Source: Guillardia theta CCMP2712
Lineage: Eukaryota > Protista > Cryptophyta
Direction of reading: 5' to 3'
DNA length: 64,000 nt
NCBI RefSeq assembly: GCF_000315625.1
Contig: NW_005434636.1
Location: forward strand, 124,001 to 188,000
Part shown: positions 14,395 through 57,167 of the stretch, one piece after another
How positions within the stretch are numbered: the stretch's first letter is position 1
Layout of the letters: each line of letters begins with the position of its first letter
Position numbers and translations under genes: made by a program
The notes under the pieces: generated by a model
Told to the model about the DNA's origin: nothing
What the model saw: the letters and a program-made list of their open reading frames with translations, nothing else
Database searches by the model: none

Positions 14395-16818
14395 TCATGA
14401 AAGCTCGAAGGGGTCTACCCAGCTCTTCCATCCCTCTATCCCCATCGCCATCTCCTCGTCCGACAGCAGGCAGTCGTCGAGCGCTTCCTTGAGCTTGTCC
14501 TGCAACAGCTTGAGCGACCCTTGACCTTGTTCGTCCTCCTCCTCCTCCTCCACCACCACCACCACCACCACCTCCTCCTCCTCCTCCTCCACCACCACCT
14601 CCTCCTCCTCCTCCTCCTCCTCACCCGGTTCAGGTCGGTACCGATGAAGACGATCTCCGTCCGCCTGTCACCATGCGGATTCTCCTTGAGCTTCTTCTGC
14701 ATCGTGTTCCTCGTCTGCTCCTCCATCTCCGGCCAGTCGCTCTCTGCTGCTCGTATCAGTGTAGGCCCCATGTGTTTGACTCTCTTCTCCTCCTCTCCTC
14801 CTCCCTCCTTCACGTCTCCTCCCTCTTCACGTTCGCATTCTCCCTTCCTCTCCTCTCCCGTTTCACCTGCTGTCTCGCACAGCCATGGTCTTTCAGCCTT
14901 GAGCGTAAGGAAAGCGCCAGCCTGAAGCGAACGTCAGAGGAGCACAAGAGGCATGAAATGGAGTGGCCAGATGAGGAAGAGGATGAAGATTGAGGGAGGA
15001 TAGCGCAGGAGCAGGCAAAGGAGGAGCAAGAGCAGATTGAGTGTGGGAAAGTCGAAAAACAGGATGGGAAGAAAAGGGACCATGAGACAGCGAGGAGGAC
15101 CAGGGGGAAACTGATGGGAAGGACAAGGAGGAGGAGGAAGAGGAAAGAAGGAGGAAAGGAGGAAAGGAGGAAAGGAGGAAAGGAGGAAAGGAGGATGATG
15201 AGGAGCTGGTGGCGGAGAAAGATTCGCAGGGAAAGTCACACCTGGCTCCAAGTGATGCAGTAGGCTGAGGAGGTTGCGAGCCACATGACTCCCTTAGATC
15301 GCAGGATCTGACCCAAACACGCCTCCTGCATCTCTGCAACCATCTCCTTCCTCTGCCTCTCCCGCTCCTTCACATCGTCCTCTTCGTCGCTAGCTGCATC
15401 ATCGTTGCTCTCCTGTGCGAGCATCGTCAGGGAGAGAAGTTCAAGGACGAGTCCTGCTTCACCTCTCTGACGTGTTCCGAGGGCACGCTCTTGTCTTCGT
15501 CTCCGTCATCGTAGTTGATGTGATAGCTTACTTCCTTTCCTTTCACCTCCTTCCCTGCTACACAACCCGGATGAAACGCTTCGCTACCCATCCATCGAGC
15601 CTCGACCCTGCTGCCAATAGCGAACGTCCCATCTTCATCTCTCTTGACACCCTCCTCCTCCTCCTCCTCCTCCTCCTCTTCTTCCTCCTCCTCCTCCTCC
15701 TCTGCGTCTTCTTTGTGTCCAATATCGCCATTTCCATTCCTGACCTCCGTTTCTTCCTCCTTGCGATCCGAGTGGCCATGTTCATGTTCATCATGGCTGT
15801 GATCATGGTCATGTTCATCATCTTCAGGGAGCATAGCAGAGGTGAAGAAAAAGCGATCTGTGAAGTTGTGGTAGAGACGCATAGGATGAAACGGTCTCTC
15901 CGATCTGTACACCATGCTCGTTATACCGTACTCGATCGTCTCCGCCATCTGAGTCAACGGTGTAGTGTACAAGAACGATTTGCCCCATCCTGGGTGTTGG
16001 GTTGCCTTCTCTAGAGAGAACAACCCAGTGTTCACAACCTGGTCGAGAGGAACTTTGCCGTGACTTGTCGAGATGATGTTTGCCTTTGGGTTGAGTTTGC
16101 AAATGACTTCTTTGATCCGCTCGACCTCCCTCGCAGACACAAGGTCTACCTTGTTCACAATGACGACATCTGCAAACTCTAACTGGTCAATCATCAGGTC
16201 TACAACTGTCCGATCGTCTTCAGCCGGGGCTTCCTGGTGTCTCTCGTGCACTCGCTCAACAGACTCAAACACAGATGAGAAATTCGCCGCATCGACGACA
16301 GTCACGCACGTGTCCAGCCGGGAAAGGGAAGACAGGGCAGTCACAGCCTTGCTCGCATTCTCACTTAGCTGTGACGTGATCGCCTTGGATAGACCGTCTC
16401 CTCCCTTCGCCTTCTTGCTCGGCGGCTCTCCAACCTTCTTCTCCTCCCCTCCTTCTCCATCCTCCTCCACATTCATCACGAAACTCTCTGCCGTATGCAT
16501 CGGCTCCGCCACACCCGTGCTCTCTATGATCAAGTAGTCAAACCGACCATCTCGTGCTAGTTTGCCGATCTCTTCCACCAGGTCCTGACGGAGGTCGCAA
16601 CAGATGCAGCCGTTGGACAGTTCAATGATCTTCTCCTCCCTCTGTATGAGCGCAGTGTCCTTGATAATGTTGGCATCGATGTTGATTTCCGCCATGTCGT
16701 TCACCAGCACTGCGCACTTCATTCCCTTTCTGTTCCGAAGGATCTCCTCGAGCAATGTCGTCTTGCCTGATCCGAGGAACCCGGACAGGAGAGTGACAGG
16801 AAGACGCTTGTCGGTCAT
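14395..16818 (-). CDS. COG0523/CobW-family G3E P-loop GTPase (YciC/ZagA-like zinc metallochaperone) with inserted Tudor-like domain
   Basis: GFLGSGKTT, CICC (CxCC), ESTG, NKVD, RPFHP.RL, His-rich HDHDHSHDEHEHGH, ILRSKG.WLAT, GDRRTEIVFIG, L..CLL...W...DPF. Confidence 0.94.
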
Positions 16819-17709: not shown

Positions 17710-21066
<3,357 letters not shown>

Positions 21067-42442: not shown

Positions 42443-45400
42443 TTAGCTAGAGTACTGCAAATTACGGATTGCTTCTTGCTCGAGTAGAGCTAAGTCCGAT
42501 ACATCAAGCTCGTCCTCGTCCTCGTCCATCAAACTTGCTTGCATCCAGTGAGCAGGAGGCGCTTTGGCTGGCGTCTTTCCGATCTCCTGAGTCTTTGACC
42601 CTTCGGCTGGCTTGTCATCACGCTGCTGCAAGTTTGCCAGCGCTGAAGCCTCCAGCCGCTTCAATTCCTCCAAGTCCAAGTCATCCTCCTCGTCCTCGTC
42701 GTCCAGATCGAGTTTCAAGCTGGGAGCAGAGCTGGGCGCTGCCTCCGTCTTGATCTTCTTCGGCATCGCCTGCTCGTCAACATCCTTGTCATCCTCGAGG
42801 TTTCTCTTGAGCGCGCCCACCTCCCCAGCACGAAGTCCCTCAGTCACAGCTGTATCCTTGCTCGAGCTCTCCTCCACCGACTCCCCTTGCACCTCTTCAG
42901 ACTCTCCTCGTCCTGCCCCAACATGCTCGTCAACTGCAGATTCCGGTGCAGCATCATCGTCGGACAGAGGAGTCAGGGCGACAGTCGCTTCTTGTGCCTG
43001 CTCGCTCTCCTCAACGTTCGCAGAGACGCTCTTCTCCTCATCACGTGACGAGTGCGTTGAAAGCTTTGGAGGAAGGAGGGAGGTAGACAGCTTGGCTGCT
43101 TCAGTTTGTGTTGCTGTTTCTGCCTGAGAGCTGCTGGACGAGTTCAAGGTGTCCGCAGGTATGGATTCATCCTCATCATCAGTATCGAAGGGCCCAGCAT
43201 CTGTAGCGTTGCTGACGGTGTTGTCCACAGTCTGTTCGATATCGCTCTCTTCTGCCAACTCGAGGATCTCCTCATGTTCCTCTTGCTCGCTGTCTGTCTC
43301 CGCATTGCCATCAACGCTGTCTTGAGTGGTTGGCTGTGAGGTAGGATGCTGTGGCTGTGTCACTGTACAAAGTAACTCACTTTCCTTGTGATCGGGAGAA
43401 CTGCTGGCGGGGCTGTCTTCAAGGTTTGTTTCATCCTCATCGTCAGTGTCATCGAGAACAAGTTTAGCTCTTCTCGGATGCTTCTTCGCGATCGAGGTCG
43501 CACTCTCATCGTCTTCAGAGGGAGCGCTTGCTTCGTTTTCCCCTTGGGGAGGGAGATTGGTGGATTCATGTGACCCTGTGAGGGAGGAAGGTGCTGTCTC
43601 GTCTCCAGCTGGAGCCTCTTGTGTGTTCCTCCCTTCATCTTCACATCCTTGTGTCTCCCTGCCCTCAGATTCAACGAGGCACTCGTTGTCATCCTGCTCA
43701 AGGCTCGTTTGAACATCCTGCGATGCGCTGCTCTTTGGTCGCTTGTTAGCCTCGGCATTCTCGTCAACATCCTCCCGGGACCTCTTGGAGTTGCTCTGCT
43801 GTTGAGCTTCTTCCAGGCTGTTCGCGATCATCCTAGAAACCTTGCGGGCGAGCTTGGGGAGTTTCATCCTTTCCTTTCCACCGATCATCGCCCTGATCTT
43901 ATCGTCGGGGAGGATGTAGCCATCATCATCAGGGTCAAAGAGATCGTGCAACTTGATGTAATCCAGCACAAAGGCCATGGCCTCTTTGCGAGCCATTCGA
44001 TCTCTGCCAACAAATTCTGCCAAGGGTCTGCTCAGGTACAGCAAGTCTTCAGCAGGCTCCTGCTGAGAGGTCGTCGACTGCTCTAGCGTGCTTTCTTGTG
44101 TCTCAACTTTGGCGGGTTGGACGGGAGCATCATCGTTCTGTTGGAGGCGTTGCAAGATCGGCACATCATCATCTGAATCGCTCACGACAGGTTTGTTTCT
44201 GACCGAGGTTGTAGCTCGAGAAAGGAGGCTCCTCTTTAACTTGGGCATTTTCACTTTCCTTTCTGGCTCATCCTTGCTTGCACTCTTGAACGACGACCCA
44301 ACGAGGGCCTCAGACCGAACTTCTTGTGGAAGATCGAACTTGCAGCTCTGACAGCACACCCATATCGCATTCTCATCTTTGATGTCGCCCTCTTCCAAAC
44401 CAACACAAGGTCCGTGGAACCAAACCTCACACGCCTCGCAGAATACCATGAAGACGTCTACCACAGATCTGCCAAGCTTGCACGACCGCTTGCAGTGGAT
44501 TTCGTTCGTTGAAGCACCAGGAGCTTCATGATGGTGGCCCTTGGTCTCTAGGAGGAACCATCTCTTCTTCGACGAGTTACCGTATTCGCCCTTGTTCAGG
44601 ACGAGCTCTTTCTCTCCCGTCAGCGATCCCTTGGTGTCTTTGCTCCGAAAAGCCACTACCGCAACAACAGCATCTCCTCTGTTTTCCATAACATCTTTGA
44701 TCCTGCATTGGAACCATTTCGACGAGTCATTCCAAAAGTACATGATATCTTTTCCCACTAAATTTCCAAGATCGAGAGATTCTTCGGATAAAGCCCTCAA
44801 GCCTCTCGACAAGGTACACCCATCTTTCTTGGAGGACTTGGCTCTCTCCTTCTTCGGCTTGCTTTCCGATGATCCAGAGCTCGCTGTCTTGCGCCTTCTT
44901 GGTTTTTGGGAACCAATGATCAGATTTCCTCGCCTGTCCTTCAACGGCAGATCATCAGCACAATCTGCCGAACAGACCCAGTTATCGTCATCTGTCACGT
45001 TCCCATGTTTGACTCCGATACATTCTCCATGGAACCACACGTTGCACGTGTCACAGCAGATCATAAAGCTTCGGCTGTCCCATTTCCTCTCTTTCTTACA
45101 TCCCTGTGTGCACATTTGTGCCTTGGCAACGTGATGGGTCTCTTCGGCCTCGGAATCTGTAAAGCATTTCAGCGCATGCAGACAACTCAATCTGCCACCT
45201 GTTGCAAATGCAGCATCTTGATTCTCGTGCTCAACTTCTTCCTTGTCGTCGTCGTCCAACTCAGTCTCTGAATCTGTTCGCTCTCCACCTTCACTCTCAG
45301 TTGCTCCTGCTTCCCCTGAATCACTCATCTTTTCATCCGGCTGCTGGGGACTTGAATCAGGCTTCAGTCCCTCTGCTGTGATTTCTCCGATGTTGTCCTC

Positions 45401-48400
45401 TTGCCGAGGTCTTGCCGTTGCGTCCACAGACTGTTGCTGTTCCTCAACGGCGACATCTTCATCATCCGTCCTCTCTGTTTCTTTCGCGACCACTAGTTGA
45501 GAGTTCTTTTCTGCAGCATTCGATTCTTGTGCATCAGATGAATTCTCAGGCATGATGGTTTCCGACTCGGAACCTTTCGAGCTATCATGCAACAAGTTCT
45601 CGTCTGCACCAACCTTGGGATGTTCGTCAGTGGGCAACGTATCGGGATTCGCTGAGTTGATCTCCTCCTCCGGCAAGGGCTCAAGACGGAGAAGGAATCT
45701 GATTGCAGCATCCCTTACACTCTCCAAGATCTGATCCAGATCGACTGCAGATATCAACTCTTTCCCTCTCGACAAGGATATCCCCACAACTTTTTCGATC
45801 AAATTCTGTAGGAGCAAGATCATTCGATTTAAAATCATCGCATTCAGAACCTGAGTGAAATAGCCCAACATCGCCTCCAGACGTCGGATACCGTTGTTGC
45901 TCAAACTCTTAAGGCTTCCTCCCGCACATGACGGATGGAGCTCCTTGATCTGACGCTTCATCGTTTCTTTCGGAACAGATACTGCAGTGCTTGGAAGTTC
46001 CGAGCCTCTGACGCTCTGCTTCAGATCTCGGGAATGAATGGGTCATTTAAAATTACCTCAGAACTTCACCTACACTACTTCTTGGCTCTTGTGGAATCCA
46101 TTTACGGATGGCCTTGCCAAAGAGTCAGTACACGAGGGAAACTCTTTGACAGGTTTGCTACCTTCTTGATGGATGTTTCCGAGAAAGTACAACTCAGTTC
46201 AGGCCGACCCAGCAAGCCTCCCATGAATTGATAACAGATGAGCTTCAATCGGTCTTTGGCATCGTTATCCACTCGCAGCTTCCTCGCGCTGGAGTCCAAC
46301 TTCAAGGCTTTGTCCACCATAAGGGCAGACGCAGGCTGCCTATTCCTCTTGGCTTTTGGCTTGTCGTCCTTCTCTGAGGGAATGTAAATCCTTCTTGTCC
46401 TGGGCTTTCTTGCTTTTGTCTCTTGTACTTCGTCGTCTTCGGTTTCATCACCTCCGGACTTTTCTGATTCAGTTACATCGCCAGCATTGTCCTCTGAATC
46501 TGTGGCGAAGGAGCTCATAGCCTTGCGTCGAGGTGTTCGTGTAGTTCGTGTGCGCGGCCTCCTTGCTGAGTTGGAAGAAGTTGATTTGATTACCTTCCTT
46601 TCCTTGGCCTTGCTCAAGGAATAGTTTGCTTTTTGATAGTCATCAGCAAATGTCAAGCCTTTCTCAAAGAAATCCTTTGCATATTCATCGTGCTCCCACA
46701 ATCCTGACTCATGCAGATCGTCTCCCTGAGGAGCTTGCCCAACATTGTTTGATTCCTTGTTGGCAGACATTGCGATGGGCTCATCATCATCACTGTCATT
46801 CTCAGCAGTGCTCGCCTTCGAAAGCAGAAACTTCTTCCTTGAACTTTGGGTTTTGCCCTGCTTGTTAGCGACTTTGTCACTTTCTGATTTCATGTCAGAA
46901 TCGTTTTCCGACTTTTCATCTTCAGTTACATCGCCAACATCCATGCCAACTGGTTCGTTGTCGTTCACTGCAGTGGCATTATCTTTGACAATTTCCTTCC
47001 CATTTTCCGTTTCTTGAACAGAGGACGGTTCTGGCTTTGATTCGCAAACCTGTCCTGTCGTAGTTGATAAATCGCTGAAAACTGCTTGTGAAGACAGTTC
47101 TCCCTTTGATTCCAACGCTTTTTCTGTCGTAGATGATGAATTCGTCTTTGAGTCCAACACTTTTGGTAAATTCATCTTCGACACACCTGATAGATAAAAA
47201 TTCAGAATTGAGACATGCAAGATGGCTGTCACTCACAATCCTTGAGTCTCTTCTTCAGGTACTCTTTCTTCCGATGAGGGACGTGAATTCCAACAATCTT
47301 GCGACCGCAAGTCGTCGCTACTCGCACAACCTGATCATGATTTTCAGAACGGCGTTAGAAAGTTCCGAGTCACTGACCTTCACACTAAATTCATCGTCGC
47401 GAGGATTCTTGATCGCAACAGATTTTTTGATTTCCTCCCAAAAAGGAAATACTGATCCAGTAAGAATGTTATACACATACATTCTTTTCTTGTAAACACA
47501 AACATCTTTGCCTTTACAGCTTGATGATCTTGCACTGTGCCCGCAATGATCCTTTGAGTACTCATAAATCTCCTTCCAAATTTTTTCTGCTTCTTCTAGG
47601 TCCAGCTTGTCGTAATCATTCCGAAGCTTGAAATTTGAAACTTCCTCTGGCCTATGACCTGCGTGCGGTAGAGTGGTATGATAGATCCTCCGTCTCTTAC
47701 CATGCACCTCCTGCTTCTTTGCAAGTGCAAGAATGATATTGTAGAAAGCATCATTTTGAGGGTCCTTCTTCTTGTAAAAACCAGCCACCTCATCATTCTG
47801 GCTGTCTAGAAACTCTTTAGCTTCTTCCCATGACACTCCCCTGTCTCCCCAAAGGGTCAGCAGGCTTGTGTGAGCATTGGTTGCTGGATTCTGGTGAAGG
47901 ATTTCTTCATCTTTCAGCTTCAGCTCGGAGGCAATGTCTGTTATTCCATCCTGATATTCCCCACGCATTTTGGCATCACGAATGAGGATCTCCATAAGCA
48001 CATGCCAGAAAGAGAAAATTTGCCCTTGCAGGCACAATTTCACTCCAAACAATCTGTTCAGGAATACATTGACGGTGGGAAATGTTTCTGAATCCCCGTG
48101 CCCAAACATTCCGGCTTTTTGCAGCGCTGTCATCGCAACTGTTGCAAATTTTTCGAAATCGTTCTCATATTCAGTCTCCAGAAACTCCAATTCATTAACC
48201 GCGTCTTCAGCAAAGGGAGGGAGCGACCCGTCTGATAGGCAGTTGAAGACTTTCTCAAGAGCCTCCGGACCATACCGTGGATCGATGGCGAAGTTGGTCA
48301 GACCGCTTCCTCCTGTCGCTCTTCTGTCCCCTTGAGTCATCGCACCCAGTTGCTGAAGTCTCTCAGCTACCGCACTTGCGAACCTCCATTCACCACCGAT

Positions 48401-51400
48401 GGGAGTCATGATTAACTTGAACTCTGGGGCGCTGGACTGGTTGGATCTATGGGAACGGCCCATTTGCTGCACAGCTCTGTCTGCACTCCAAGGTAGCTGG
48501 AGAGTGATGTGAACGCGTCTCCGTGTGTTCTTGACACGCCTATCGGCATGCAGGCTGATGCCAGTCGATGCAGCCTCTGAGATGATCGCGACCAGTTTTT
48601 TCCCCGACATGAACTTCTTCCTTTCGCGAATGTTGATCGCATCGCCCGAAGAGTCTGATTTGATGCGTTTCACAAGCGTCCATTCGCCTCGGACGCAGAC
48701 TTGTCTCACGGATCGACCAGTCATCTCTGCAACACGTTTGGGGCCCCCGAGCAAGTCAATGATTTCATCCAATGGATTTATCGGCAGCTGCAAAGCATCA
48801 ATTCTTTCAAGAATCTGTTCTTTCTCCTCTGTCGTCATCACTTTCACTCCGAACTTTTCTATGAAATTTTTAAGGAGGTTGCATGCTGCTGAACATCCGG
48901 ATTCTTCCTCAGTTGCTACTGACTCGCCTGTATTCTGGAAAACCAGCAACATCAAAACTTGTCACAAAAATGATATGAAAACTATACCTGCAAACCAATC
49001 ACGACGCACTTTCCTTGTTGGATTGCTTCGTTTGCTATTCTGACAACACCTTTCACCTTAGCAGCCATACAGATTTGGCCCCAAAATCTTTGGTTAGCAC
49101 CCCAAAGTTGGGACCGCAATTGGTTGATTTCCTTTCTAGTGAGATTCTCTATGCCTTTCTTACAGAATCCGGAGAAATGTGATATGATATCTGACCATAG
49201 CTCCACCGCTTTGTCGTACTTCAGCATGAATTCTTGATCAATTTCTTCTTCCACAACCTCAAACTCAGCACCTTTGAAAGACAGGGATCTTGCTAGGTAT
49301 TGTCCTAACTGTTTCAACTCCATCGCAAGCAGTTCCATCGCTCCCGTCCCTCCAGAACGAATCTCTCTCACAAAGGTGTCTGGGGTATCAAACGAGGTTC
49401 CAGGGCCCCACAAACCTAGTCTTGAGGCATAGAGCAAATGCTCTGGTTCACTCGCACCGGTAGCGGAGACATACACAACTCTTGCCAACGGTAGCTGCTG
49501 CTGAATCTCAATGACTGCAGTAGCTGACTTGGTTCCATTAGTCCTCAATGCTTGGCTCAGTTTGTGTCGTCCCTTTTTCGGAATCCTGATGTTTTTGGCC
49601 TTATGTGCCTCATCAAAGGCAAGAACTCCATCGAAGTCCTCCCCAGCCCACTTGACAATCTGTGTCAGCCGGCTCTGATCCTTCCCCCCTCCTGCTCCGT
49701 TTCTGACCAACAATGAGTAGGTGCAGAAGATGACGCCCTGATTGAGCTCCTCGAAGCTATTCAGGTCCTTATTGTTGCCGTAGTCTCTCAGGTCATGAAT
49801 GGGAATTGCTCCTCCACCGATGTCGCAGATGTCTCTCTTTGCATCATCAATGAGATCTGAGCTGATTGAAATCCATATTGCCCTCTTTCGACCTCGAATG
49901 AAGTTTTCCAGTATGATTCCTGCGATTTGACGCCCTTTACCCACACCTGTTAACCTGTCAATCTGCGAAGTTTTACAAGTGGTGCATTGTTTACCCGGCC
50001 CGTCGCCCATGAAGAAGCCAGAGCGATACTGGGTTCCAGGGATCATCCGCTCGTGTTGCTCACATGCATAGATCACAGATTCCAGCTGCAAATTTGTCAG
50101 GCGCCCTTCCTTGATGGTAGCCTCCGGCAATCTGAGCTTGATGCTCCATTTGGGAGGAATGATTGAACTCAATGTTGAAGTCTCCGTGATGGGATCAGGA
50201 TGGCAAACCAAGCTGCTTATCTCTTTCAATCTCGGAGGTGCATACTCTGGATTCAGGATCAACAAACTTTATCACATCAAAGACCAAGTGAGATGTTACC
50301 TGTGAATGTCTTTCCCTCTTTCTCATTGTATGCAGCTCCAAATTGCTCATCCAATACCATCTCTTCTGTTTCAATACGCATCTGCTTGAGAGCAGGATCT
50401 TCATAACCGTTTCGATGTGGACACTGCTTGGTGTGTCGCCCTCCAGTCTTCCAGCAGCTCTCACAAATTTGCTTTACCGTGTTGTGAGGAAATGTCGCTG
50501 GAATATTTTGGTTGACCATACCAAATGTATACGCCTGCGGAGAGTACATCAATGAATTCCCTTCGCTTGCTCCTGCATTGTTGTATGGCGGGATAGCAGC
50601 CCTAAACATACTTGAGTACATCATTTGGTATTGAGGGTTAGAAAAAGCATTTGGTTGGCGATTTTCAAAACCCATAAGGTCACGATTGTAGGAATTCAAT
50701 CCAGCATATGATGAAAGAGGCTGATCTATCGAAGAGGCACCTGGAAATTTTTCTGGTTTCAAACTTTCTAATCTCGAATTCCCCCATACGTTGTAAGCTT
50801 TTTCTTCTGAATTGGCTGCTACAGGCCGATTCGATGAAGGCGAAGGCAGGTGCATCAAGTTTTTCTGATCCCCAACAATAAAAGCTTCCCGATTGAATGG
50901 TTTCACCTGTAAATGAGACGGAACTGTCCTTACAGAGCCGGAGGCAGCCAGGACTTTTTCGGTATTTGGTTTCTGAACCATCGAAATATTCACCTTCTCA
51001 GTCTGGCGCTGAGGGTTTGAGGGAGCAGCAGCAGGCTTCAATGCAGGAGCAAGCTCAGGCTTCAATGCAGGAGCAAGCTCAGGCTTCAATGCAGGAGCAA
51101 GCTCAGGCTTCAATGCAGGAGCAAGCTCAGGCTTGTGAGGTTTTCGATTCTCAACCCTCGACAAAATCCAATTGTAAGCTTTATCCTCGGCAGCGGAAGG
51201 AGCAGGTTTGTCATCCGAGCGAGCAGGTGCAGACTGCTCTGACTTACCACTTGCAACCTTTGAACCCAACTCGTTGTTTGATGACAGAGCTTGACTGATT
51301 GCAGGCGACCGCTCGAGAGGATGGAGGGAATTTGGTGCAGACTTGTGGTTTGAAAGAACGGACATTGGTTTCCGATTGAGAGCGGTGTTCGCCTCGTCGT

Positions 51401-51458
51401 TTTCCATCGACCATTTCGATGGAGGCAGAGCTCCAGGTCGTGTCAAAGGATTGTCCAT
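42443..51458 (-). CDS. SBNO: Strawberry notch family SF2 helicase-like protein with long C-terminal extension (two PHD fingers, Tudor-like segment, SWIB)
   Basis: LQLESVIYACEQHE, GFFMGDGPG|VGKGRQIAG, FDEAHKAKN, VYVSATGASE, ISEAASTGISLHAD, QLPWSADRAVQQMGRSHRSNQ, FLNRLFG. A short in-frame exon VVRVATTCGRKIVGI links the core to the downstream ORFs. Confidence 0.9.
51033..51134 (-). repeat. 24-bp coding tandem repeat x4 (KPELAPAL) in the SBNO N-terminus
   Basis: aggcttcaatgcaggagcaagctc repeated. Confidence 0.9.
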
Positions 51459-52163
51459 GGCTTATTCCATACAAACAAACTCCTTTCATGAAAATAGTTA
51501 GTGATTTCATTAGCAAACAATTCAGTCGACCAACAAAGACAAGCAACAATGTCAAACATCCATTTCTTTCCTATCACTTCAAGTAAGAAATCAATGCTTC
51601 AGACCCTAGCATCATGTCATACAAAACTCATTGCTGCTCCTATCGTCCCTCAATCACCCGTCACATCCAACAAATATCAAACCTTGGCTGTCATTCTTAC
51701 AGTATCACTTCTTTTGAACTTACTCTACGTTCCTTGCTTATCACATCTTTGTCCTGTAGTACACCAAGATGCCTCATATCTCCATCCCCCAGCCTTCTCA
51801 ACCTCATTCCTCCTTCTCCTCGTCTTCCTTCTTATCCTTCTCCTGCTCCTGCTCCTCTTCCTGCTCCTCCTGCTCCTCCTGCTCCTGCTCCTCCTGCTCC
51901 TCCTCGGACGCCTTTCAGCATGCGAAGGGCGATTTGGCGGGAATAACCACTGACTACCCCGTCCTTCTGCTTCTTTTAGTACCCACCCGTGTTAAGCAAA
52001 GGTCCTGCAAGATTTAACTTATTTTCACCGGATTTCTGCTTCTGAGAATTCCTGTAACGACGAAGCGACCCAGCTACGAAGAAATCGACGGAGGAAGAGG
52101 AAGAGGAGCAGAGCAGAGCAGAGCAGAGCAGAGCAGAGCAGAGCAGAGCAGAGCAGAGCAGAG

Positions 52164-52194
<31 letters not shown>

Positions 52195-52353
52195 AGGAGG
52201 AGAGCAGAGCAGGAGGAGAGCAGAGGGGAGGGGGGGAAAGGGGAGGAAGGAGGATGGAGGCTAAGGGAGAAGAGAGGGGAACAAAGAAGAAACAGAGAGG
52301 ATGCAGGAATCTGAGGATGAAAATGACAAGGACAAGGGTGTGCGGGGCCAAAA

Positions 52354-53796
52354 ATGAGTCTGACTGCTGCATGCAGGATGTCCCGGACAGTGAAAGAAGT
52401 TCTCTCAGTATCAAACCGATTAAACTTTGGAGATATTTGCCGTGAGGAGTATGCAGGCAGCAACACGATGGCCCTATGGCTGCGAATGTTGCAGTTCCAC
52501 TTCGAAGTGAACAACTTGAAGAGAGACGAGTATGTTCTTACTGCTTACAACCTGCTAGACATGCGAACTCAACAAGATCTGTCGCTTCTAATCAGCTCCG
52601 ATGAGCTCAAGAAGATGAGCTGGAAGGAATTCCAGCATCTGCTGATGATAATAAATTGCTCCGTCTACCGTCCTGATTCCTCTGGGAACAAAGAGAAGCA
52701 GAGTGACAATGAGAGTGCCGTCTCGTACGTCCTTCGCTCCCAGGCGATGTATGTTGATGCTCAAGTCTCTAGTGTCATGAGGGCCGTGGACTTCGACGAG
52801 GAGAAAATGATTCAAAGTTTCCTGGAAGGTCTCCGGGATAGCGCGATGAAGCAATCCCTCATGGACTGGAAGCAGAGCACCAACGCGAACTGGCAGGAGC
52901 TGATGAAGCAGGCGGTGAGTCTGATCAAGGGAAGCGTCGACCTCAACAAGCTGCAAGCATGTTTCTCATGCAGGAACAGCGGCGGGCAGAGGAAGAACAA
53001 CAACATGAGGAAGAAGATCGACGAGGCAGCTCTAGCTGGTGCTGGTGCTGAAGAACCAGCCAAATGCATCCTCTGCGGCGGGGAAGGACGTCACACCAAG
53101 AAGTGCCCTGTGCGGCAGGCGAACAGAGGAGCCGGGTCAGGAGCAGGACCAAGTGTGGGAGCAGCAGCAGGACTGCGAGCAGGACTGGGAGCAGGAGCAG
53201 GACCTGGGCAGAGAGCAGGAGCAAGGGCAGGTGAAGGAGGCAACGAGAGAGCACGGAGAGAAGGAAGGGACGGGAGGGACGCAAGGGGTGGGGGCGGCTC
53301 AGGGCCTCCTCCTGCTCCTCCAGGGTCAGCACAGGGAGCTCGACGGATGTTGACGTTCCTCCCGCTGAAGTTCAGGAACGATTCTCCCCTCCTCGTTCAT
53401 GCGCTTGTGGCCTCAGCAGCGGCTCGTTGCCTCATCAAGAGGGAAGTGGTACAGCGGCTGCAGCTGCCAGTGCAGAGCTGCTTTCTGCGCATACTGCAAC
53501 CTATGGGCGGTGAGATGGTCCTGACTGAGATGGTGAAGATGCCCGTCACCGTTGGAGAGTGGAGGAGCAAGGAGGAGAAGTTCTTCGTGATGGAGCACCT
53601 GCCCACCGAAGCGCTCCTCTCCTCATCATGGCTCTGGGCGAACAAGATTAGCATGTCCATGTCGTTGGACGGAACGGAGCTGACTGTTGGCGACGCTAAT
53701 CCTCCCATAATCCTTCCTACTTCTCCGCCCGAGGATGTGACGATGCCCGAAGGAGCCTTCATCTCCCACTTCGAGGTGATCGAGGAAAGAAGTTGA
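52354..53796 (+). CDS. Retrotransposon-derived Gag capsid + zinc knuckle + degenerate aspartic protease (480 aa, single ORF)
   Basis: Capsid-like WL..F.., SWKEF, MHR-like KQSDNESAVSY, FLEGL, WQELMKQA; CILCGGEGRHTKKC; retropepsin fold with ALVASAA in place of ALxDSGA. Confidence 0.82.
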   Translation: MSLTAACRMSRTVKEVLSVSNRLNFGDICREEYAGSNTMALWLRMLQFHFEVNNLKRDEYVLTAYNLLDMRTQQDLSLLISSDELKKMSWKEFQHLLMIINCSVYRPDSSGNKEKQSDNESAVSYVLRSQAMYVDAQVSSVMRAVDFDEEKMIQSFLEGLRDSAMKQSLMDWKQSTNANWQELMKQAVSLIKGSVDLNKLQACFSCRNSGGQRKNNNMRKKIDEAALAGAGAEEPAKCILCGGEGRHTKKCPVRQANRGAGSGAGPSVGAAAGLRAGLGAGAGPGQRAGARAGEGGNERARREGRDGRDARGGGGSGPPPAPPGSAQGARRMLTFLPLKFRNDSPLLVHALVASAAARCLIKREVVQRLQLPVQSCFLRILQPMGGEMVLTEMVKMPVTVGEWRSKEEKFFVMEHLPTEALLSSSWLWANKISMSMSLDGTELTVGDANPPIILPTSPPEDVTMPEGAFISHFEVIEERS

Positions 53797-54005
53797 GAGC
53801 GATTCCCCTCCCGCCGCTGCTCCTCTCCTTGTGAAAGAGGTGGAGGGGGTGCTGGAGATGTTGAGGTCAGGTTATATTGGTGTAAAGTCGAGCATGAAGG
53901 AGATTTGCATCAGAGTATTTGTGTTGATTCCCTTCTCCTTGCTCCTTTCTCTTCCTCTCTCCCCCATCTTCCTCCTCTGCTCTCCTCTCGTTGCCGTCGC
54001 TCGCT

Positions 54006-54514
54006 TCAGTTGCGGAACGGACCCCATCCGTCCCCTGGGCCCCGCTCCCCCTGCGAGACACCCGAGCGCTCTTTCCTCTTCCTCCTCACTTCCGCCACGT
54101 TTTTGTCTGGAGCAGCAATCGTTCCTGAGGCGACGGTCAATTGACGATAGTGAAAAGGGAGGGAGGTGGAGGAGGGAAGAGAAGGGGAGGACGAGAGAGA
54201 GGGAGGAGAAGGAGAGGAGAGGAGAGGAGAGGAGAGGAGAGGAGAGGAGAGGAGAGGAGAGGAGAGGAGAGGAGAGGAGAGGAGAGGAGAGGAGAGGAGA
54301 GGAGGACGAAAGGGCAGAAAGGAGGAAGAGAACAAGAGAGTACCGAGATCTTGAAGGCTCATGCTGATGTCTTCCAGGAATTGAGCATCGCCACAAAGGG
54401 GTCGCGTCTGAGAGAGGAGGATGAGTGACTGAGATGGCAGGGAAGAAAGTCGAATCTAGGAGGAATGAGGTGCAGGTGAGGACAAAGAAGAAGAAGATAA
54501 CACGGAGCATGATG

Positions 54515-54548
<34 letters not shown>

Positions 54549-54892
54549 GGAGGAGGAGGAGGAGGAGGAGGAGAGGTCATGAAGTTGAGACCTCGAGGTT
54601 CCCCGGGAAATCTCCTCCATCCTCGAGGAAGCCAAAGGCAGCGCGAAACTCGGCAGGGCCCGCCTGAGTGAAGCTGAGCTGCTGGCCAGCAGGAAGAGGC
54701 CGCAAACCTTGATCTCGGACCCGAGGTGGCAAGGGACGATCCTCTCGAAGTTCCACTGGGCCTGTCAAGCTAGTCAAAGCTGAGGTGTGCTGGATAGGAG
54801 CTGGAAGCGACCACTCTGTCGGCGAAGGCTAGGACCTGAAAGTATGAGTCCGTCAGCAAGGGGACGAGAGGAGGAGGAGCAGGAGGAGCAGG

Positions 54893-54928
<36 letters not shown>

Positions 54929-57167
54929 AGCAGGAGTGGGGGGGGGAAGAGGAAATTGTCACCTTAGCAGGTTCGCGGTCAAGAATCAATTTCTGCAAGA
55001 CTGCAGGAACCTGAGGAGGAAGAGCTGTGAGAAAGAGTTGAAGGACATCGAGGGGGGAACGACTCTAATGATGTGTTGGTGATCATGGGTTTGAGGAGGA
55101 GGAGGAGGAGGAGGAGGAGGAGGAGGAGGAGGAGGAAGAGGAGGAGGAGGAGGAAGAGGAGGAGGAGGAGGAGGATTACAAAGCATTTGTCCTTGAGTGC
55201 TTCGACAGACTCTCGCCAGTAAAACTTTCCCTGGCAGGAGCAGTCAGCGCGGAGTAGAAAGGACAGAAGAAGTGAAGAAGTTGAAAGAGCAAAGGATAGA
55301 AGAAGGGGATGGGGGAGAAAGAGAGTCAAACAAGAAGAGAAGGAAGAGGAAAAGGAAAGGAGAAAATTGGCGATTGGGCACGGGAAGACGGAGGAGGAAG
55401 ACCTGGGGGTGGGGGCCGTCCTGCGGCCGCCAAGTGAAGGGAAACAGTCCATTCCAACCGAGTTCGTTCATTTGTCCCTGATACAAGTTAGATAGTTAAG
55501 CCCTCCCATCCCATCCTCTTCCTCTGCATCTTTCCTTCAACGCTCCTCGCTCCCGCAGCCTCCACTCCTTCCTTCATCATGTCCACTTTCATCCATTCCT
55601 CATACACCCAACCCTCATCTCACCCTCTCCTCCTCTCCCCTTTCCTTGTCTCCTCCCTTGTCTTCCACCCGTGTCTCCCTCCCTTCTCTCCTCATCCTTC
55701 CTCTCCTCACCTTCTGAAGGTCTTTGAACGCCTGTCCCCAGGGAACAACTTCCACTCCTCCTGCCATGGCACATCAGACCTCCTCCTCCTCCCACAACAT
55801 GAAGGCAACCAGGTTGGAAGAAGAGGGAGAAGAGCGCTATCCTCTCCCATCCTCTCTGTCGCACTTCCGGCGTGTCCTGCACCTTCCCAAAGGCTGGTCC
55901 AACCATCAGCGACAGGAGACGAACTCTCAAGCGCCTCAACCATCATCGCGAGCATGGAAGAGGAGCGCGCGGGGATCGTCAAGGATGATATCGGGGATCT
56001 TGGAGGGGAAAGTCTGCACGACGTCGGTGACCAGGAGGGTCTTGGACTTCTACAACAAGCACGTCAAAATCACCAACAGACCGCAAGGCCGCACGTCCGC
56101 TCCTCTTCCTGACCTTGTGGAAGAAGGCCACATCCTCAAACACGCCCGGAGCTTCTCCTCCACGAGACTTGAAGGGGCCAAGGACGACATGCTCTAGGTC
56201 GTCCTTCCATGGGACATCTCCGTCGCTGCTCAGCGGGAGCGGTTGAGGGTTGAGACCCCAGAACAGCTGGGTGTACCTTCCCGAATGTGTCAACCAACGC
56301 CACGCTCCTCCTCTCCTCCTTCCCTTCCTCCCATCTCTGCCACCCTGATCCTTTTACTATCATCTCCTCTTCTCCTTCCTTCGTCCTTTCACTTCCTCCA
56401 CAAATTTGCCCCTCTCCTCCTCCTCACCCCAACAATCCAACGTTCTCAAGCCCGAACGGGAAGGAGTACTGATCCGGCACAACCCACAGCTCCGCGGAAG
56501 GAAAGTGTCGCTTGAAAGGACCAGCAGCCGACTTGTGCTCCAGCGCCGTGGAACCCAGCACAACAAACCGAACATTGCCATGCTCCCCCTCTAGCTCTCT
56601 CACGAGCTTCAGACATTCTTCAGTCGGAGGTACAGGGTTGAAGACCAGCAGCCCTCCCTTCTGCAGCTTCACCACCGTCATCCTCAACGGCGTCCACACA
56701 TAAAGAGCTCCGATAATCTGATCGAACGCCCACACCTCATCCTTCACAACTTCTGTCCTCACCGTCTTCTTCCTGCTGTAGGGAGCAAGGGGAAAAACCC
56801 ACCACCTACCGTAAGCCAGTCCTCCCTCGTCCAGCAGCGAGGATGCAGAGGCTCGCTCCGCTGGCTGCAGAGCAGCAGCAGCAGCAAGTGGCAGGGTTGC
56901 AAGAACAGATTTTCTGGTGAAGAGCGGGGTTTTGGTTTGATGTTGATGGCTGCTAGATAGGCGAAGGTCCGAAATTTCCTTTTCCTCGCCCGATGATTTG
57001 AGCGACAGCACGCTCGGAGGGACGGAGCGTGTCCTGGCGTTAGCTCCCATTGAAATCCTGCCTGAGAGTTTTCCGCATCCTGCAGGCATACTGATGAATT
57101 GATATGCGCGCAAGGAGGACACCAAAGTAAGAAACAAGATCGCTTTGAGTTGCGGTGCGGCAACCAT
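54006..57167 (-). CDS. DUF4336 family protein, probably plastid-targeted, multi-exon
   Basis: PLAPYSRKKT.RTEVVKD.VW.FDQ, PLRMTVVKL..GGL.V..P..PT.EC, LEHK, DQYSFP; signal peptide MVAAPQLKAILFLTLVSSLRA-YQF; terminal exons D.QFLEDIS..L and GERGPGDGWGPFRN*. Confidence 0.85.
54213..54303. repeat. (GAGGA)n microsatellite in a DUF4336 intron
   Basis: Read directly. Confidence 0.9.

What the first reader, a model, noticed from the sequence alone, without database searches (positions are those of the whole stretch)
52354..53796. Candidate domesticated Gag capsid-pseudoprotease gene (Arc/PEG10-like) in a cryptophyte
Seen: an uninterrupted 480-aa ORF with a Ty3/gypsy-like capsid (MHR-like KQSDNESAVSY; FLEGL), an atypical CX2CX5HX3C knuckle, a Gly/Ala linker and a complete retropepsin-like domain. 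The catalytic DSG reads ASA (GCC at 53410-53412), and the distal ILG motif reads LLS. No RT, RNase H or integrase follows: a convergent host gene (DUF4336) stops ~210 bp downstream, and I see no LTRs. Known: domesticated gag genes such as Arc, PEG10 and PNMA keep the capsid and lose pol. Inference: an intact frame with loss of exactly the catalytic residues suggests selection for a non-cleaving capsid or scaffold, possibly RNA-packaging. I do not recall one described in cryptophytes.
Basis: partly seen in the sequence, partly recalled or inferred. Interest (0 to 1): 0.85.

Follow-up and report, generated by a model that had tools for sequence, protein, structure and literature searches.

The report
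Retrotransposon-derived Gag–pseudoprotease gene, Guillardia
An unannotated, intact 480-codon gene in the alga Guillardia theta looks like the capsid, zinc-knuckle and protease part of a jumping gene with its protease active site lost, and a transcribed relative in a sister genus suggests the host keeps it, which would be the first such case in this group of algae.

Summary
The ORF is real: 52354-53796(+), 480 aa, with host-like codon usage in both halves. The window is Guillardia theta CCMP2712 scaffold JH993002.1. NCBI calls no gene between SBNO and DUF4336, where the ORF lies.

An exhaustive phmmer search with residues 1-260 against 1.84 billion proteins found one relative. It is a Hanusia phi EukProt protein (45% identity, E 3e-57). 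It keeps the unusual CX2CX5HX3C knuckle and a Q-x3-E-x7-R triad.

- **Capsid part:** the Hanusia protein hits Pfam Ty3_capsid and Retrotrans_gag (E about 1e-4, below gathering cut-offs). The window ORF hits Retrotrans_gag weakly in the same register.
- **Protease part:** residues 348-427 hit Asp_protease_2 (E 2.6e-4, also sub-threshold). A-S-A stands where D-S/T-G is expected, and LLS where ILG is expected.
- **Mobile-element features:** no pol, no LTRs and no second copy in the window.

The Gag-protease origin is well supported. Host maintenance is likely, because an open frame at this divergence is improbable under neutrality and conservation is mosaic. It is not proven: genome copy number, expression in G. 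theta, synteny, dN/dS and conservation of the protease-like half could not be tested. Structure prediction was too poor to test the capsid fold.

The parts
52354..53796 (+). Uninterrupted 480-codon ORF plus stop. It is not annotated in GCA_000315625.1.
   Evidence: Not in the protein collection with any of 7 start choices. Coding score is host-like.
52486..52968 (+). Capsid-like, all-helical region (residues 45-205). Blocks at residues 45-100 and 166-205 are 64% and 55% identical to Hanusia phi.
   Evidence: The only hit of the exhaustive search is P0001, E 3e-57. P0001 hits Ty3_capsid at E 1.6e-4 and Retrotrans_gag at E 1.5e-4. The window ORF hits Retrotrans_gag at E 0.05 in the same register. 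The model has about 10 helices at pLDDT 66.
52699..52737 (+). Major-homology-region-like triad Q116-x3-E120-x7-R128.
   Evidence: All three residues are invariant between G. theta and H. phi. That this spacing is the retroviral MHR signature is from general knowledge.
53065..53106 (+). Zinc knuckle CX2CX5HX3C (C238, C241, H247, C251).
   Evidence: The ligands and the unusual spacing are identical in H. phi. A profile of the two sequences gives weak matches to HIV-1 nucleocapsid knuckles (E 0.6-1).
53128..53358 (+). Gly/Ala/Arg-rich low-complexity linker (residues 259-335), encoded by a GCAGGA/GAGCAG-type simple repeat.
   Evidence: No coding signal. H. phi also has a low-complexity Ala/Gly/Pro stretch after its knuckle.
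53359..53673 (+). Retropepsin-like domain (residues about 336-440). The Pfam match covers residues 348-427.
   Evidence: Asp_protease_2 at E 2.6e-4 and 22.1 bits (cut-off 24.3), covering profile positions 10-89 of 90. gag-asp_proteas at E 0.009. The low-confidence model has beta strands at 359-413.
53410..53418 (+). A353-S354-A355 at the position where retropepsins carry the catalytic D-S/T-G.
   Evidence: for coordinates. The placement is inferred from the Pfam register (residue 348 at profile position 10) and the flanking pattern: hydrophobic residues, the motif, then A.
53614..53622 (+). L421-L422-S423 within ALLSSSWL, at the position of the distal ILG(xD) motif, 70 residues after A353.
   Evidence: for coordinates. 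The motif assignment is an inference from the known retropepsin pattern.

Best explanation
This is a missed protein-coding gene of Guillardia theta. It descends from the gag-protease part of a Ty3/gypsy-like LTR retrotransposon and is now kept by the host at a fixed locus between SBNO and DUF4336.

It retains four parts:
- a helical capsid-like domain;
- one zinc knuckle;
- a disordered linker;
- a retropepsin-like domain that cannot cleave, because the catalytic Asp and Gly and the distal Gly are replaced.

**Inferred mechanism.** The protein acts without enzymatic activity and stays as one uncleaved, 'immature-Gag-like' chain. The capsid-like domain mediates self-association, the knuckle binds nucleic acid, and the dead protease fold is kept as a dimerising module.

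**Most likely role** (my estimate about 35% given domestication): interference with related retroelements by co-assembly, in the manner of Fv1, Ty1 p22 or enJS56A1, or by forming inactive protease heterodimers. An Arc/PEG10-like cargo capsid is less likely (about 15%).

**Shown:** the ORF, its domain order, the substitutions, the homologue, and the absence of pol and LTRs. **Inferred:** host maintenance and everything about function.
For: - The ORF is intact and scores as coding in frame 1 in both halves, with host-like codon usage.
- An exhaustive phmmer search with residues 1-260 found one relative in 1.84 billion representative proteins. It is a Hanusia phi EukProt protein, 45% identical, E 3e-57.
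- H. phi public data are an MMETSP transcriptome of a species related to G. theta (PMC5619915).
- The homologue's top Pfam hits are Ty3_capsid (E 1.6e-4) and Retrotrans_gag (E 1.5e-4), covering nearly the whole profiles. The window ORF hits Retrotrans_gag in the same register.
- The C-terminal part hits Asp_protease_2 (E 2.6e-4) and gag-asp_proteas. About 20 other window ORFs gave no retroelement hit.
- The knuckle ligands and their odd spacing are invariant, and so is the Q-x3-E-x7-R triad.
- Conservation is mosaic, with 64% and 55% identity in blocks against 25-34% in loops. Aromatic residues are kept: W 4 of 4, F 6 of 7, Y 4 of 5.
- In a neutral simulation at the divergence that gives 67% amino-acid identity, a mean of 8 stops arise in 480 codons. 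None of 2000 runs stayed open.
- There are no LTRs, no pol, no second copy in 64 kb, and host genes lie within 0.8-0.9 kb.
Against: - All Pfam hits are below the curated gathering cut-offs.
- The AlphaFold models were poor (pLDDT 38 full length, 66 for the N-terminal crop). Foldseek found no capsid or any other match.
- The ORF is not in the G. theta gene set or in any source of the protein collection, so there is no sign of expression in G. theta.
- Copy number in the rest of the 87-Mb genome could not be searched.
- The Hanusia protein ends inside the low-complexity linker, so whether the protease-like half is conserved is unknown.
- The C-terminal half was searched only with the word index and a 264-840 aa length window.
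- Retrotransposons are also transcribed, so a Hanusia transcript alone does not prove host function.
- On its own, the 145-codon C part stays open in 12% of neutral runs.
- The in-frame join of the two halves goes through a repeat that is open in several frames, so that join has about a 1 in 3 chance.
Confidence: 0.55

Rival explanations
1. It is a stranded or non-autonomous retrotransposon remnant, not a host gene. The copy would be truncated (gag-PR only) from a family that still lives elsewhere in Guillardia and Hanusia genomes. Its open frame would reflect recent insertion, or selection at the level of the element rather than the host.
For: The Gag-PR domain order is retroelement-like. The annotators did not call it, as often happens with repeats. 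Cryptophyte genomes carry retrotransposons, including a Copia element in G. theta (PMC12220804). Copy number was not testable here. Fast divergence (45% identity between related genera) is typical of Gag.
Against: There are no LTRs or other non-simple direct repeats within 8 kb, and no room for pol. An element old enough to have lost both LTRs should also have lost its frame. The residues at both expected protease motifs are replaced while no stop has arisen. Codon usage is host-like. No annotated G. theta protein or any other protein except one Hanusia sequence matches residues 1-260. A live family would be expected to leave several annotated fragments.
Confidence: 0.3
2. It is a lineage-specific host protein unrelated to retroelements. 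It would be a helical domain plus a CCHC knuckle plus a beta-rich domain, whose weak Pfam similarities are chance or convergence.
For: Every Pfam hit is below its gathering cut-off. There is no structural match. No hit to solved capsids or retropepsins by sequence. A similar knuckle motif sits in the neighbouring non-retroelement ORF.
Against: Two independent domains each take retroelement families as their top two hits, at E about 1e-4 against the whole library. They lie in the canonical N-to-C order with a knuckle between them. The profile coverage is nearly end to end (positions 6-96 of 97 and 10-89 of 90). The MHR-like triad is conserved.
Confidence: 0.08
3. It is a chance ORF in non-coding, repeat-rich intergenic DNA.
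For: It is unannotated. It is flanked by purine-rich microsatellites, and its middle is a simple repeat open in several frames.
Against: P(open) is about 4e-10 for the whole ORF and about 4e-5 for the N part alone. The codon signal is specific to frame 1. There is a homologue at E 3e-57 in another genus.
Confidence: 0.02

Closest known systems
PEG10 and RTL3 (mammalian SIRH/RTL genes derived from Ty3/gypsy gag-protease)
   Same: They are capsid plus CCHC knuckle plus retropepsin-type domain kept at a fixed host locus without RT, integrase or LTRs (PMC11011659, PMC7212762).
   Different: In PEG10 the protease follows a programmed -1 frameshift and keeps an active Asp-Ser-Gly used for self-processing (PMC7212762). 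Here the two parts are in one frame through a simple-repeat linker, and the motif reads Ala-Ser-Ala. There is no detectable sequence relationship to the mammalian genes, so the origin would be independent and in a cryptophyte.
Arc / dArc1 and PNMA (capsid-only domesticated Gag genes)
   Same: They are Gag capsid-derived host genes. Some assemble capsids and carry RNA (PMC11011659, PMC6525542).
   Different: Those lack a protease-like domain. Assembly and RNA binding are untested here, and intercellular transfer has no obvious place in a unicellular alga.
Gag-derived restriction factors (mouse Fv1, sheep enJS56A1, yeast Ty1 p22)
   Same: They are a Gag-derived protein, kept by the host or the element, that interferes with particles of related elements. 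Such proteins evolve fast. Fv1 is cited in PMC11011659; the others are from general knowledge.
   Different: No such activity has been tested here. None of those carries a dead protease domain.
RTL1 (retains likely inactive RT and RNase H folds)
   Same: It is a precedent for a domesticated retroelement gene keeping an enzymatically dead but structurally conserved domain (PMC11011659).
   Different: In RTL1 the dead domains are RT and RNase H, and the protease is kept. Here the protease itself has lost the expected motif residues.
Autonomous Ty3/gypsy (Metaviridae) retrotransposon gag-pol
   Same: It is the source of the domain order CA-NC-PR and of the best Pfam matches.
   Different: Here there are no LTRs and no RT, RNase H or integrase. 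The expected catalytic motif is lost, and the ORF sits between host genes.

Membership tests
Ty3/gypsy-type Gag capsid (Pfam Retrotrans_gag PF03732, Ty3_capsid PF19259) | Profile match to the family models | tested here: inconclusive
   The Hanusia homologue scores 22.4 bits at E 1.5e-4 (cut-off 24.1) and 21.6 bits at E 1.6e-4 (cut-off 29.1), with near-full profile coverage. The window ORF itself scores 14.3 bits at E 0.05, in the same register. The hits are significant by E-value but below the curated cut-offs.
Ty3/gypsy-type Gag capsid (Pfam Retrotrans_gag PF03732, Ty3_capsid PF19259) | Two-lobed all-alpha capsid fold | tested here: inconclusive
   The model of residues 37-201 is all-helical with about 10 helices, but pLDDT is 66 and pTM 0.46. 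Foldseek against PDB and BFVD gave nothing at E<=0.001.
Ty3/gypsy-type Gag capsid (Pfam Retrotrans_gag PF03732, Ty3_capsid PF19259) | Major-homology-region-like Q-x3-E-x7-R | tested here: met
   Q116, E120 and R128 have that spacing and are invariant in H. phi.
Ty3/gypsy-type Gag capsid (Pfam Retrotrans_gag PF03732, Ty3_capsid PF19259) | CCHC zinc knuckle downstream of the capsid | tested here: met
   C238, C241, H247 and C251 are conserved in H. phi. The spacing CX2CX5HX3C differs from the canonical CX2CX4HX4C.
Retropepsin (clan AA aspartic protease) | Profile match to retropepsin-like models | tested here: inconclusive
   Asp_protease_2 scores 22.1 bits at E 2.6e-4 (cut-off 24.3), covering profile positions 10-89 of 90. 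gag-asp_proteas scores E 0.009. No hit to solved retropepsins by sequence.
Retropepsin (clan AA aspartic protease) | Catalytic Asp-Ser/Thr-Gly | tested here: not met
   The position reads Ala353-Ser354-Ala355, and the distal ILG position reads LLS. It is therefore filed as a pseudoprotease derived from this fold, not as a protease.
Co-opted (domesticated) gag genes | Loss of pol and LTRs, sitting among host genes | tested here: met
Co-opted (domesticated) gag genes | Single or low copy in the genome | not testable with these tools
   Only 64 kb of the genome was available, with no second copy in it. No annotated paralogue exists in the protein library.
Co-opted (domesticated) gag genes | Orthologues in other species at a syntenic locus | not testable with these tools
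   A homologue exists in H. phi, but only as a transcript-derived protein with no genomic context.
Co-opted (domesticated) gag genes | Purifying selection | tested here: inconclusive
   dN/dS could not be computed because no Hanusia nucleotide sequence was available. Indirect evidence is 0 of 2000 neutral simulations keeping 480 codons open, plus mosaic conservation with aromatic residues kept.
Co-opted (domesticated) gag genes | Expression as a host transcript | not testable with these tools
   The H. phi sequence comes from EukProt. H. phi public data are an MMETSP transcriptome (PMC5619915). There are no data for G. theta, and the ORF is absent from all sources.
Autonomous LTR retrotransposon | Flanking LTRs and RT, RNase H and integrase | tested here: not met
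   Only simple repeats are shared between the flanks. Only 781 bp lie downstream before the next gene, with no retroelement Pfam hits there.

The most novel reading that the evidence does not exclude
Guillardia and Hanusia keep a host gene made from a retrotransposon's Gag and a deliberately disabled protease. It would act as a trans-dominant poison of related retroelements, or of retro-like viruses, by co-assembling with their Gag and forming dead protease heterodimers. This would be the first co-opted gag gene in a protist and a new way to use a pseudoprotease.
Probability: 0.2. Interest if true: 0.75.

Novelty: new member of a known kind. Interest (0 to 1): 0.5.

Why it matters
Co-opted gag genes are known from animals, plants and fungi. 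A survey of 2,011 eukaryotes found 14 events and none in protists, and its authors noted that their sampling was biased (PMC8321522). A cryptophyte case would extend the phenomenon to a distant, unicellular lineage with a sequenced model species.

It would also offer a simple system to ask what a capsid-like protein does without multicellular signalling. Keeping a protease fold that has lost its catalytic residues would be a useful example of a retroviral-type pseudoenzyme.

At the practical level, it shows a missed gene in the G. theta annotation, and probably a second one next to it.

Tried and rejected
- **Word-index protein searches.** Searches with the whole ORF, with residues 1-225 and with residues 336-480 found nothing. 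The first was swamped by the low-complexity linker. The others were limited to proteins of 264-840 aa.
- **Exact look-ups.** Look-ups of the ORF with 7 alternative starts, and of the Hanusia protein, found no encoding contig and no cluster members.
- **Metagenome scans.** Two scans, one with the N-terminal alignment and one with the C-terminal part, gave no relatives.
- **Searches of solved structures by sequence.** The whole ORF, the N-terminal profile and the C-terminal part gave only low-complexity noise and weak HIV nucleocapsid knuckle matches.
- **Structure prediction.** AlphaFold2 on the full length and on the N-terminal crop with a two-sequence alignment gave pLDDT 38 and 66. Foldseek against PDB (twice) and BFVD gave no meaningful match, so the fold test is inconclusive rather than negative.
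- **Other libraries.** NCBIfam gave nothing relevant.
- **LTR search.** Repeat finding and sensitive blastn of the flanks found only microsatellites, which are common across the window.
- **Neighbouring ORF.** I considered whether the 393-aa ORF is a paralogue. Only a 10-residue knuckle motif is shared.
- **Other features.** No tRNA or Rfam family lies nearby that could mark a primer-binding site. No spliced-leader acceptor-like polypyrimidine tract lies just upstream of the ATG.
Full report
**1. The observation**

The ORF at 52354-53796 on the + strand is open for 480 codons.
- KQSDNESAVSY is residues 115-125.
- FLEGL is residues 156-160.
- The knuckle C238-x2-C241-x5-H247-x3-C251 lies at 53065-53106.
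- LVASAAA is residues 351-357, with Ala353 encoded by GCC at 53410-53412.
- LLS is residues 421-423, inside ALLSSSWL.

At local base composition an open stretch of 480 codons has probability about 4e-10. The N part alone has about 4e-5.

I trained a codon-usage log-likelihood on Pfam-supported genes of the same window. Residues 1-225 score 0.21 bits per codon and residues 336-480 score 0.19, in frame 1 only. Host genes score 0.05-0.32 when left out of training. Residues 226-335 show no coding signal.

That middle stretch is a GCAGGA/GAGCAG-type simple repeat. It is open in other frames and recurs in nearby intergenic DNA. The in-frame join of the two halves is therefore weaker evidence than it looks.

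**2. Where the window comes from and what surrounds the ORF**

An exact look-up of a neighbouring IBR-domain ORF placed the window on Guillardia theta CCMP2712 scaffold JH993002.1, assembly GCA_000315625.1. I mapped that locus onto the window.

The NCBI gene set has no gene between SBNO and DUF4336. SBNO starts at window 50202 on the - strand. DUF4336 spans window 54577-57050 on the - strand. The ORF is therefore unannotated. Its product, with any of seven possible start codons, is absent from a collection of about 15 billion proteins.

The annotated end is 781 bp downstream. DUF4336-like exons are detectable only from about 55.6 kb upward.

Other mobile-element features are missing:
- There is no room for pol downstream, and ORFs there have no retroelement hits.
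- The flanks share nothing but microsatellites, which are common across the window.
- There is no second copy in the 64 kb.

**3. Relatives**

Word-index searches with the whole protein and with each half found nothing. I used the one exhaustive phmmer job on residues 1-260, against 1.84 billion representative proteins. It returned exactly one protein, P0001. P0001 is 308 aa, 45% identical, E 3e-57, and covers query residues 14-258. It is EukProt EP00960_Hanusia_phi_P026044.

Hanusia phi is a relative of G. theta, and its public data are an MMETSP transcriptome (PMC5619915). The homologue is therefore most probably a transcribed sequence.

It ends inside a low-complexity Ala/Gly/Pro stretch that follows its knuckle. 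That fits a transcript assembly broken at a repeat. The consequence is that I cannot say whether Hanusia has the protease-like half. Two metagenome scans found nothing.

**4. What the domains are**

*Capsid-like part.* The Hanusia protein takes two Gag capsid families as its top two Pfam hits:
- Ty3_capsid at E 1.6e-4, residues 25-151 on profile positions 23-147 of 198.
- Retrotrans_gag at E 1.5e-4 to 5e-4, residues 56-149 on profile positions 6-96 of 97.

The window ORF itself gives Retrotrans_gag at E 0.05, residues 87-162 on profile positions 26-97, in the same register.

*Protease-like part.* The C-terminal piece takes two retropepsin-like families as its top two hits:
- Asp_protease_2 at E 2.6e-4 and 22.1 bits, residues 348-427 on profile positions 10-89 of 90.
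- gag-asp_proteas at E 0.009.

All of these lie below Pfam's gathering cut-offs, so I do not claim formal family membership. However, about twenty other ORFs of the window gave no retroelement hit. Two independent domains also point to the same kind of element, in the canonical order, with a CCHC-type knuckle between them.

*Conserved motifs.* Between the two species the knuckle ligands and their unusual spacing are invariant. So are Q116, E120 and R128, whose spacing Q-x3-E-x7-R is the signature of the retroviral major homology region (the signature is from general knowledge).

*Protease motifs.* The flanking pattern is hydrophobic residues, the motif, Ala, then an amphipathic stretch ending in L-x-L. 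With the Pfam register, this places A353-S354-A355 where D-S/T-G is expected. Seventy residues later, LLSSSWL stands where Ty3/gypsy proteases have ILGxDWL. These two placements are inferences, because the tool does not print the profile alignment.

**5. Structure**

AlphaFold2 with only two sequences gave pLDDT 38 for the full length. The crop of residues 37-201 gave pLDDT 66 and pTM 0.46. The crop is all-helical with about ten helices, which is compatible with a two-lobed capsid. Foldseek against PDB and BFVD found nothing meaningful. The fold test is inconclusive, not negative.

**6. Is it kept by the host?**

Evidence for:
- *The open frame.* I evolved the ORF neutrally to the divergence that gives 67% amino-acid identity, roughly one lineage's share of the observed 45%. 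This creates a mean of 8 stops in 480 codons. None of 2000 runs stayed open. The N part stayed open in 0.9% of runs and the C part in 12%.
- *Mosaic conservation.* Residues 45-100 are 64% identical and 89% similar. Residues 166-205 are 55% identical, and the knuckle 62%. Loops and the basic spacer are 25-34% identical. Aromatic residues are kept: Trp 4 of 4, Phe 6 of 7, Tyr 4 of 5. This pattern indicates constraint on a folded domain.
- *Other signs.* Codon usage is host-like. An element old enough to have lost both LTRs should also have lost its frame. The residues at both expected protease motifs are replaced while no stop has arisen.

Evidence against, or missing:
- Genome-wide copy number, expression in G. 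theta, synteny in Hanusia, dN/dS and conservation of the C-terminal half could not be tested with these tools.
- Transposons are also transcribed.
- The annotators did not call this gene.

I put host maintenance (domestication) at about 0.55, a stranded or non-autonomous transposon remnant at about 0.3, and the remaining readings at about 0.1 together.

**7. How it probably works (inference)**

The protein cannot process itself, so it would remain a single Gag-like chain.
- The capsid-like domain would mediate self-association.
- The knuckle would bind nucleic acid.
- Retropepsins are obligate dimers, so the dead fold is most simply explained as a retained dimerisation module.

In a unicellular alga that carries retrotransposons (PMC12220804), the role I think most likely is interference with related elements. 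This could work by co-assembly, as with Fv1 (PMC11011659), Ty1 p22 or enJS56A1 (general knowledge), or by forming inactive protease heterodimers. The fast divergence between sister genera fits such a conflict. An Arc/PEG10-like cargo capsid is possible but less likely.

**8. Comparison and novelty**

The closest known kind is the co-opted Ty3/gypsy gag-protease genes of mammals, PEG10 and RTL3 (PMC11011659, PMC7212762). Three things differ here: the origin is independent, the reading frame is single, and the protease motif is lost. RTL1 is a precedent for keeping dead enzymatic folds (PMC11011659).

A survey of 2,011 eukaryotes found 14 gag co-options in animals, plants and fungi and none in protists. 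It does not mention cryptophytes (PMC8321522). My literature searches found no report of such a gene in cryptophytes. I therefore rate it a candidate new member of a known kind, of moderate interest, with clear and cheap decisive tests.

Noticed in passing
window 50277-51458 (-): A second unannotated long ORF (393 aa) lies head-to-head with the focal ORF, about 900 bp away. It has no Pfam hit and a weak coding score. It contains a perfect 24-bp x 4.3 tandem repeat (51032-51134, KPELAPAL x4). Its CX2CX6HX3C knuckle has a GRHTKQCPHR that matches GRHTKKCPVR of the focal ORF at 8 of 10 positions. It may be an N-terminal extension of SBNO or a separate missed gene.
   Followed up: partly
window 54577-57050 (-): The annotated DUF4336 gene ends 781 bp after the focal ORF's stop, not about 210 bp. 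The low-complexity ORFs at 53872-54510 (-) show no DUF4336 similarity.
   Followed up: yes
window 52106-52225 and 54169-54304: Purine-rich pentanucleotide microsatellites, (GAGCA)x23 upstream and (GAGGA)x27 downstream, bracket the ORF. Similar arrays occur elsewhere, for example (AGAGC)x30 at 20786-20937. They are a general feature of this genome and not LTR remnants.
   Followed up: yes
window 15427-16818 (-): A single ORF combines a CobW/HypB/UreG-type GTPase domain with a C-terminal Tudor domain, which is an unusual pairing.
   Followed up: no
window 42443-50265 (-): The SBNO helicase ORFs (AAA_34, Helicase_C_4, SBNO domain) are followed on the same strand by a 1172-aa ORF with PHD fingers and a SWIB/MDM2 domain. 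Whether this is one very large gene or two genes was not examined.
   Followed up: no
window 1-64000: No tRNA gene and no Rfam family at gathering score in the whole window.
   Followed up: yes
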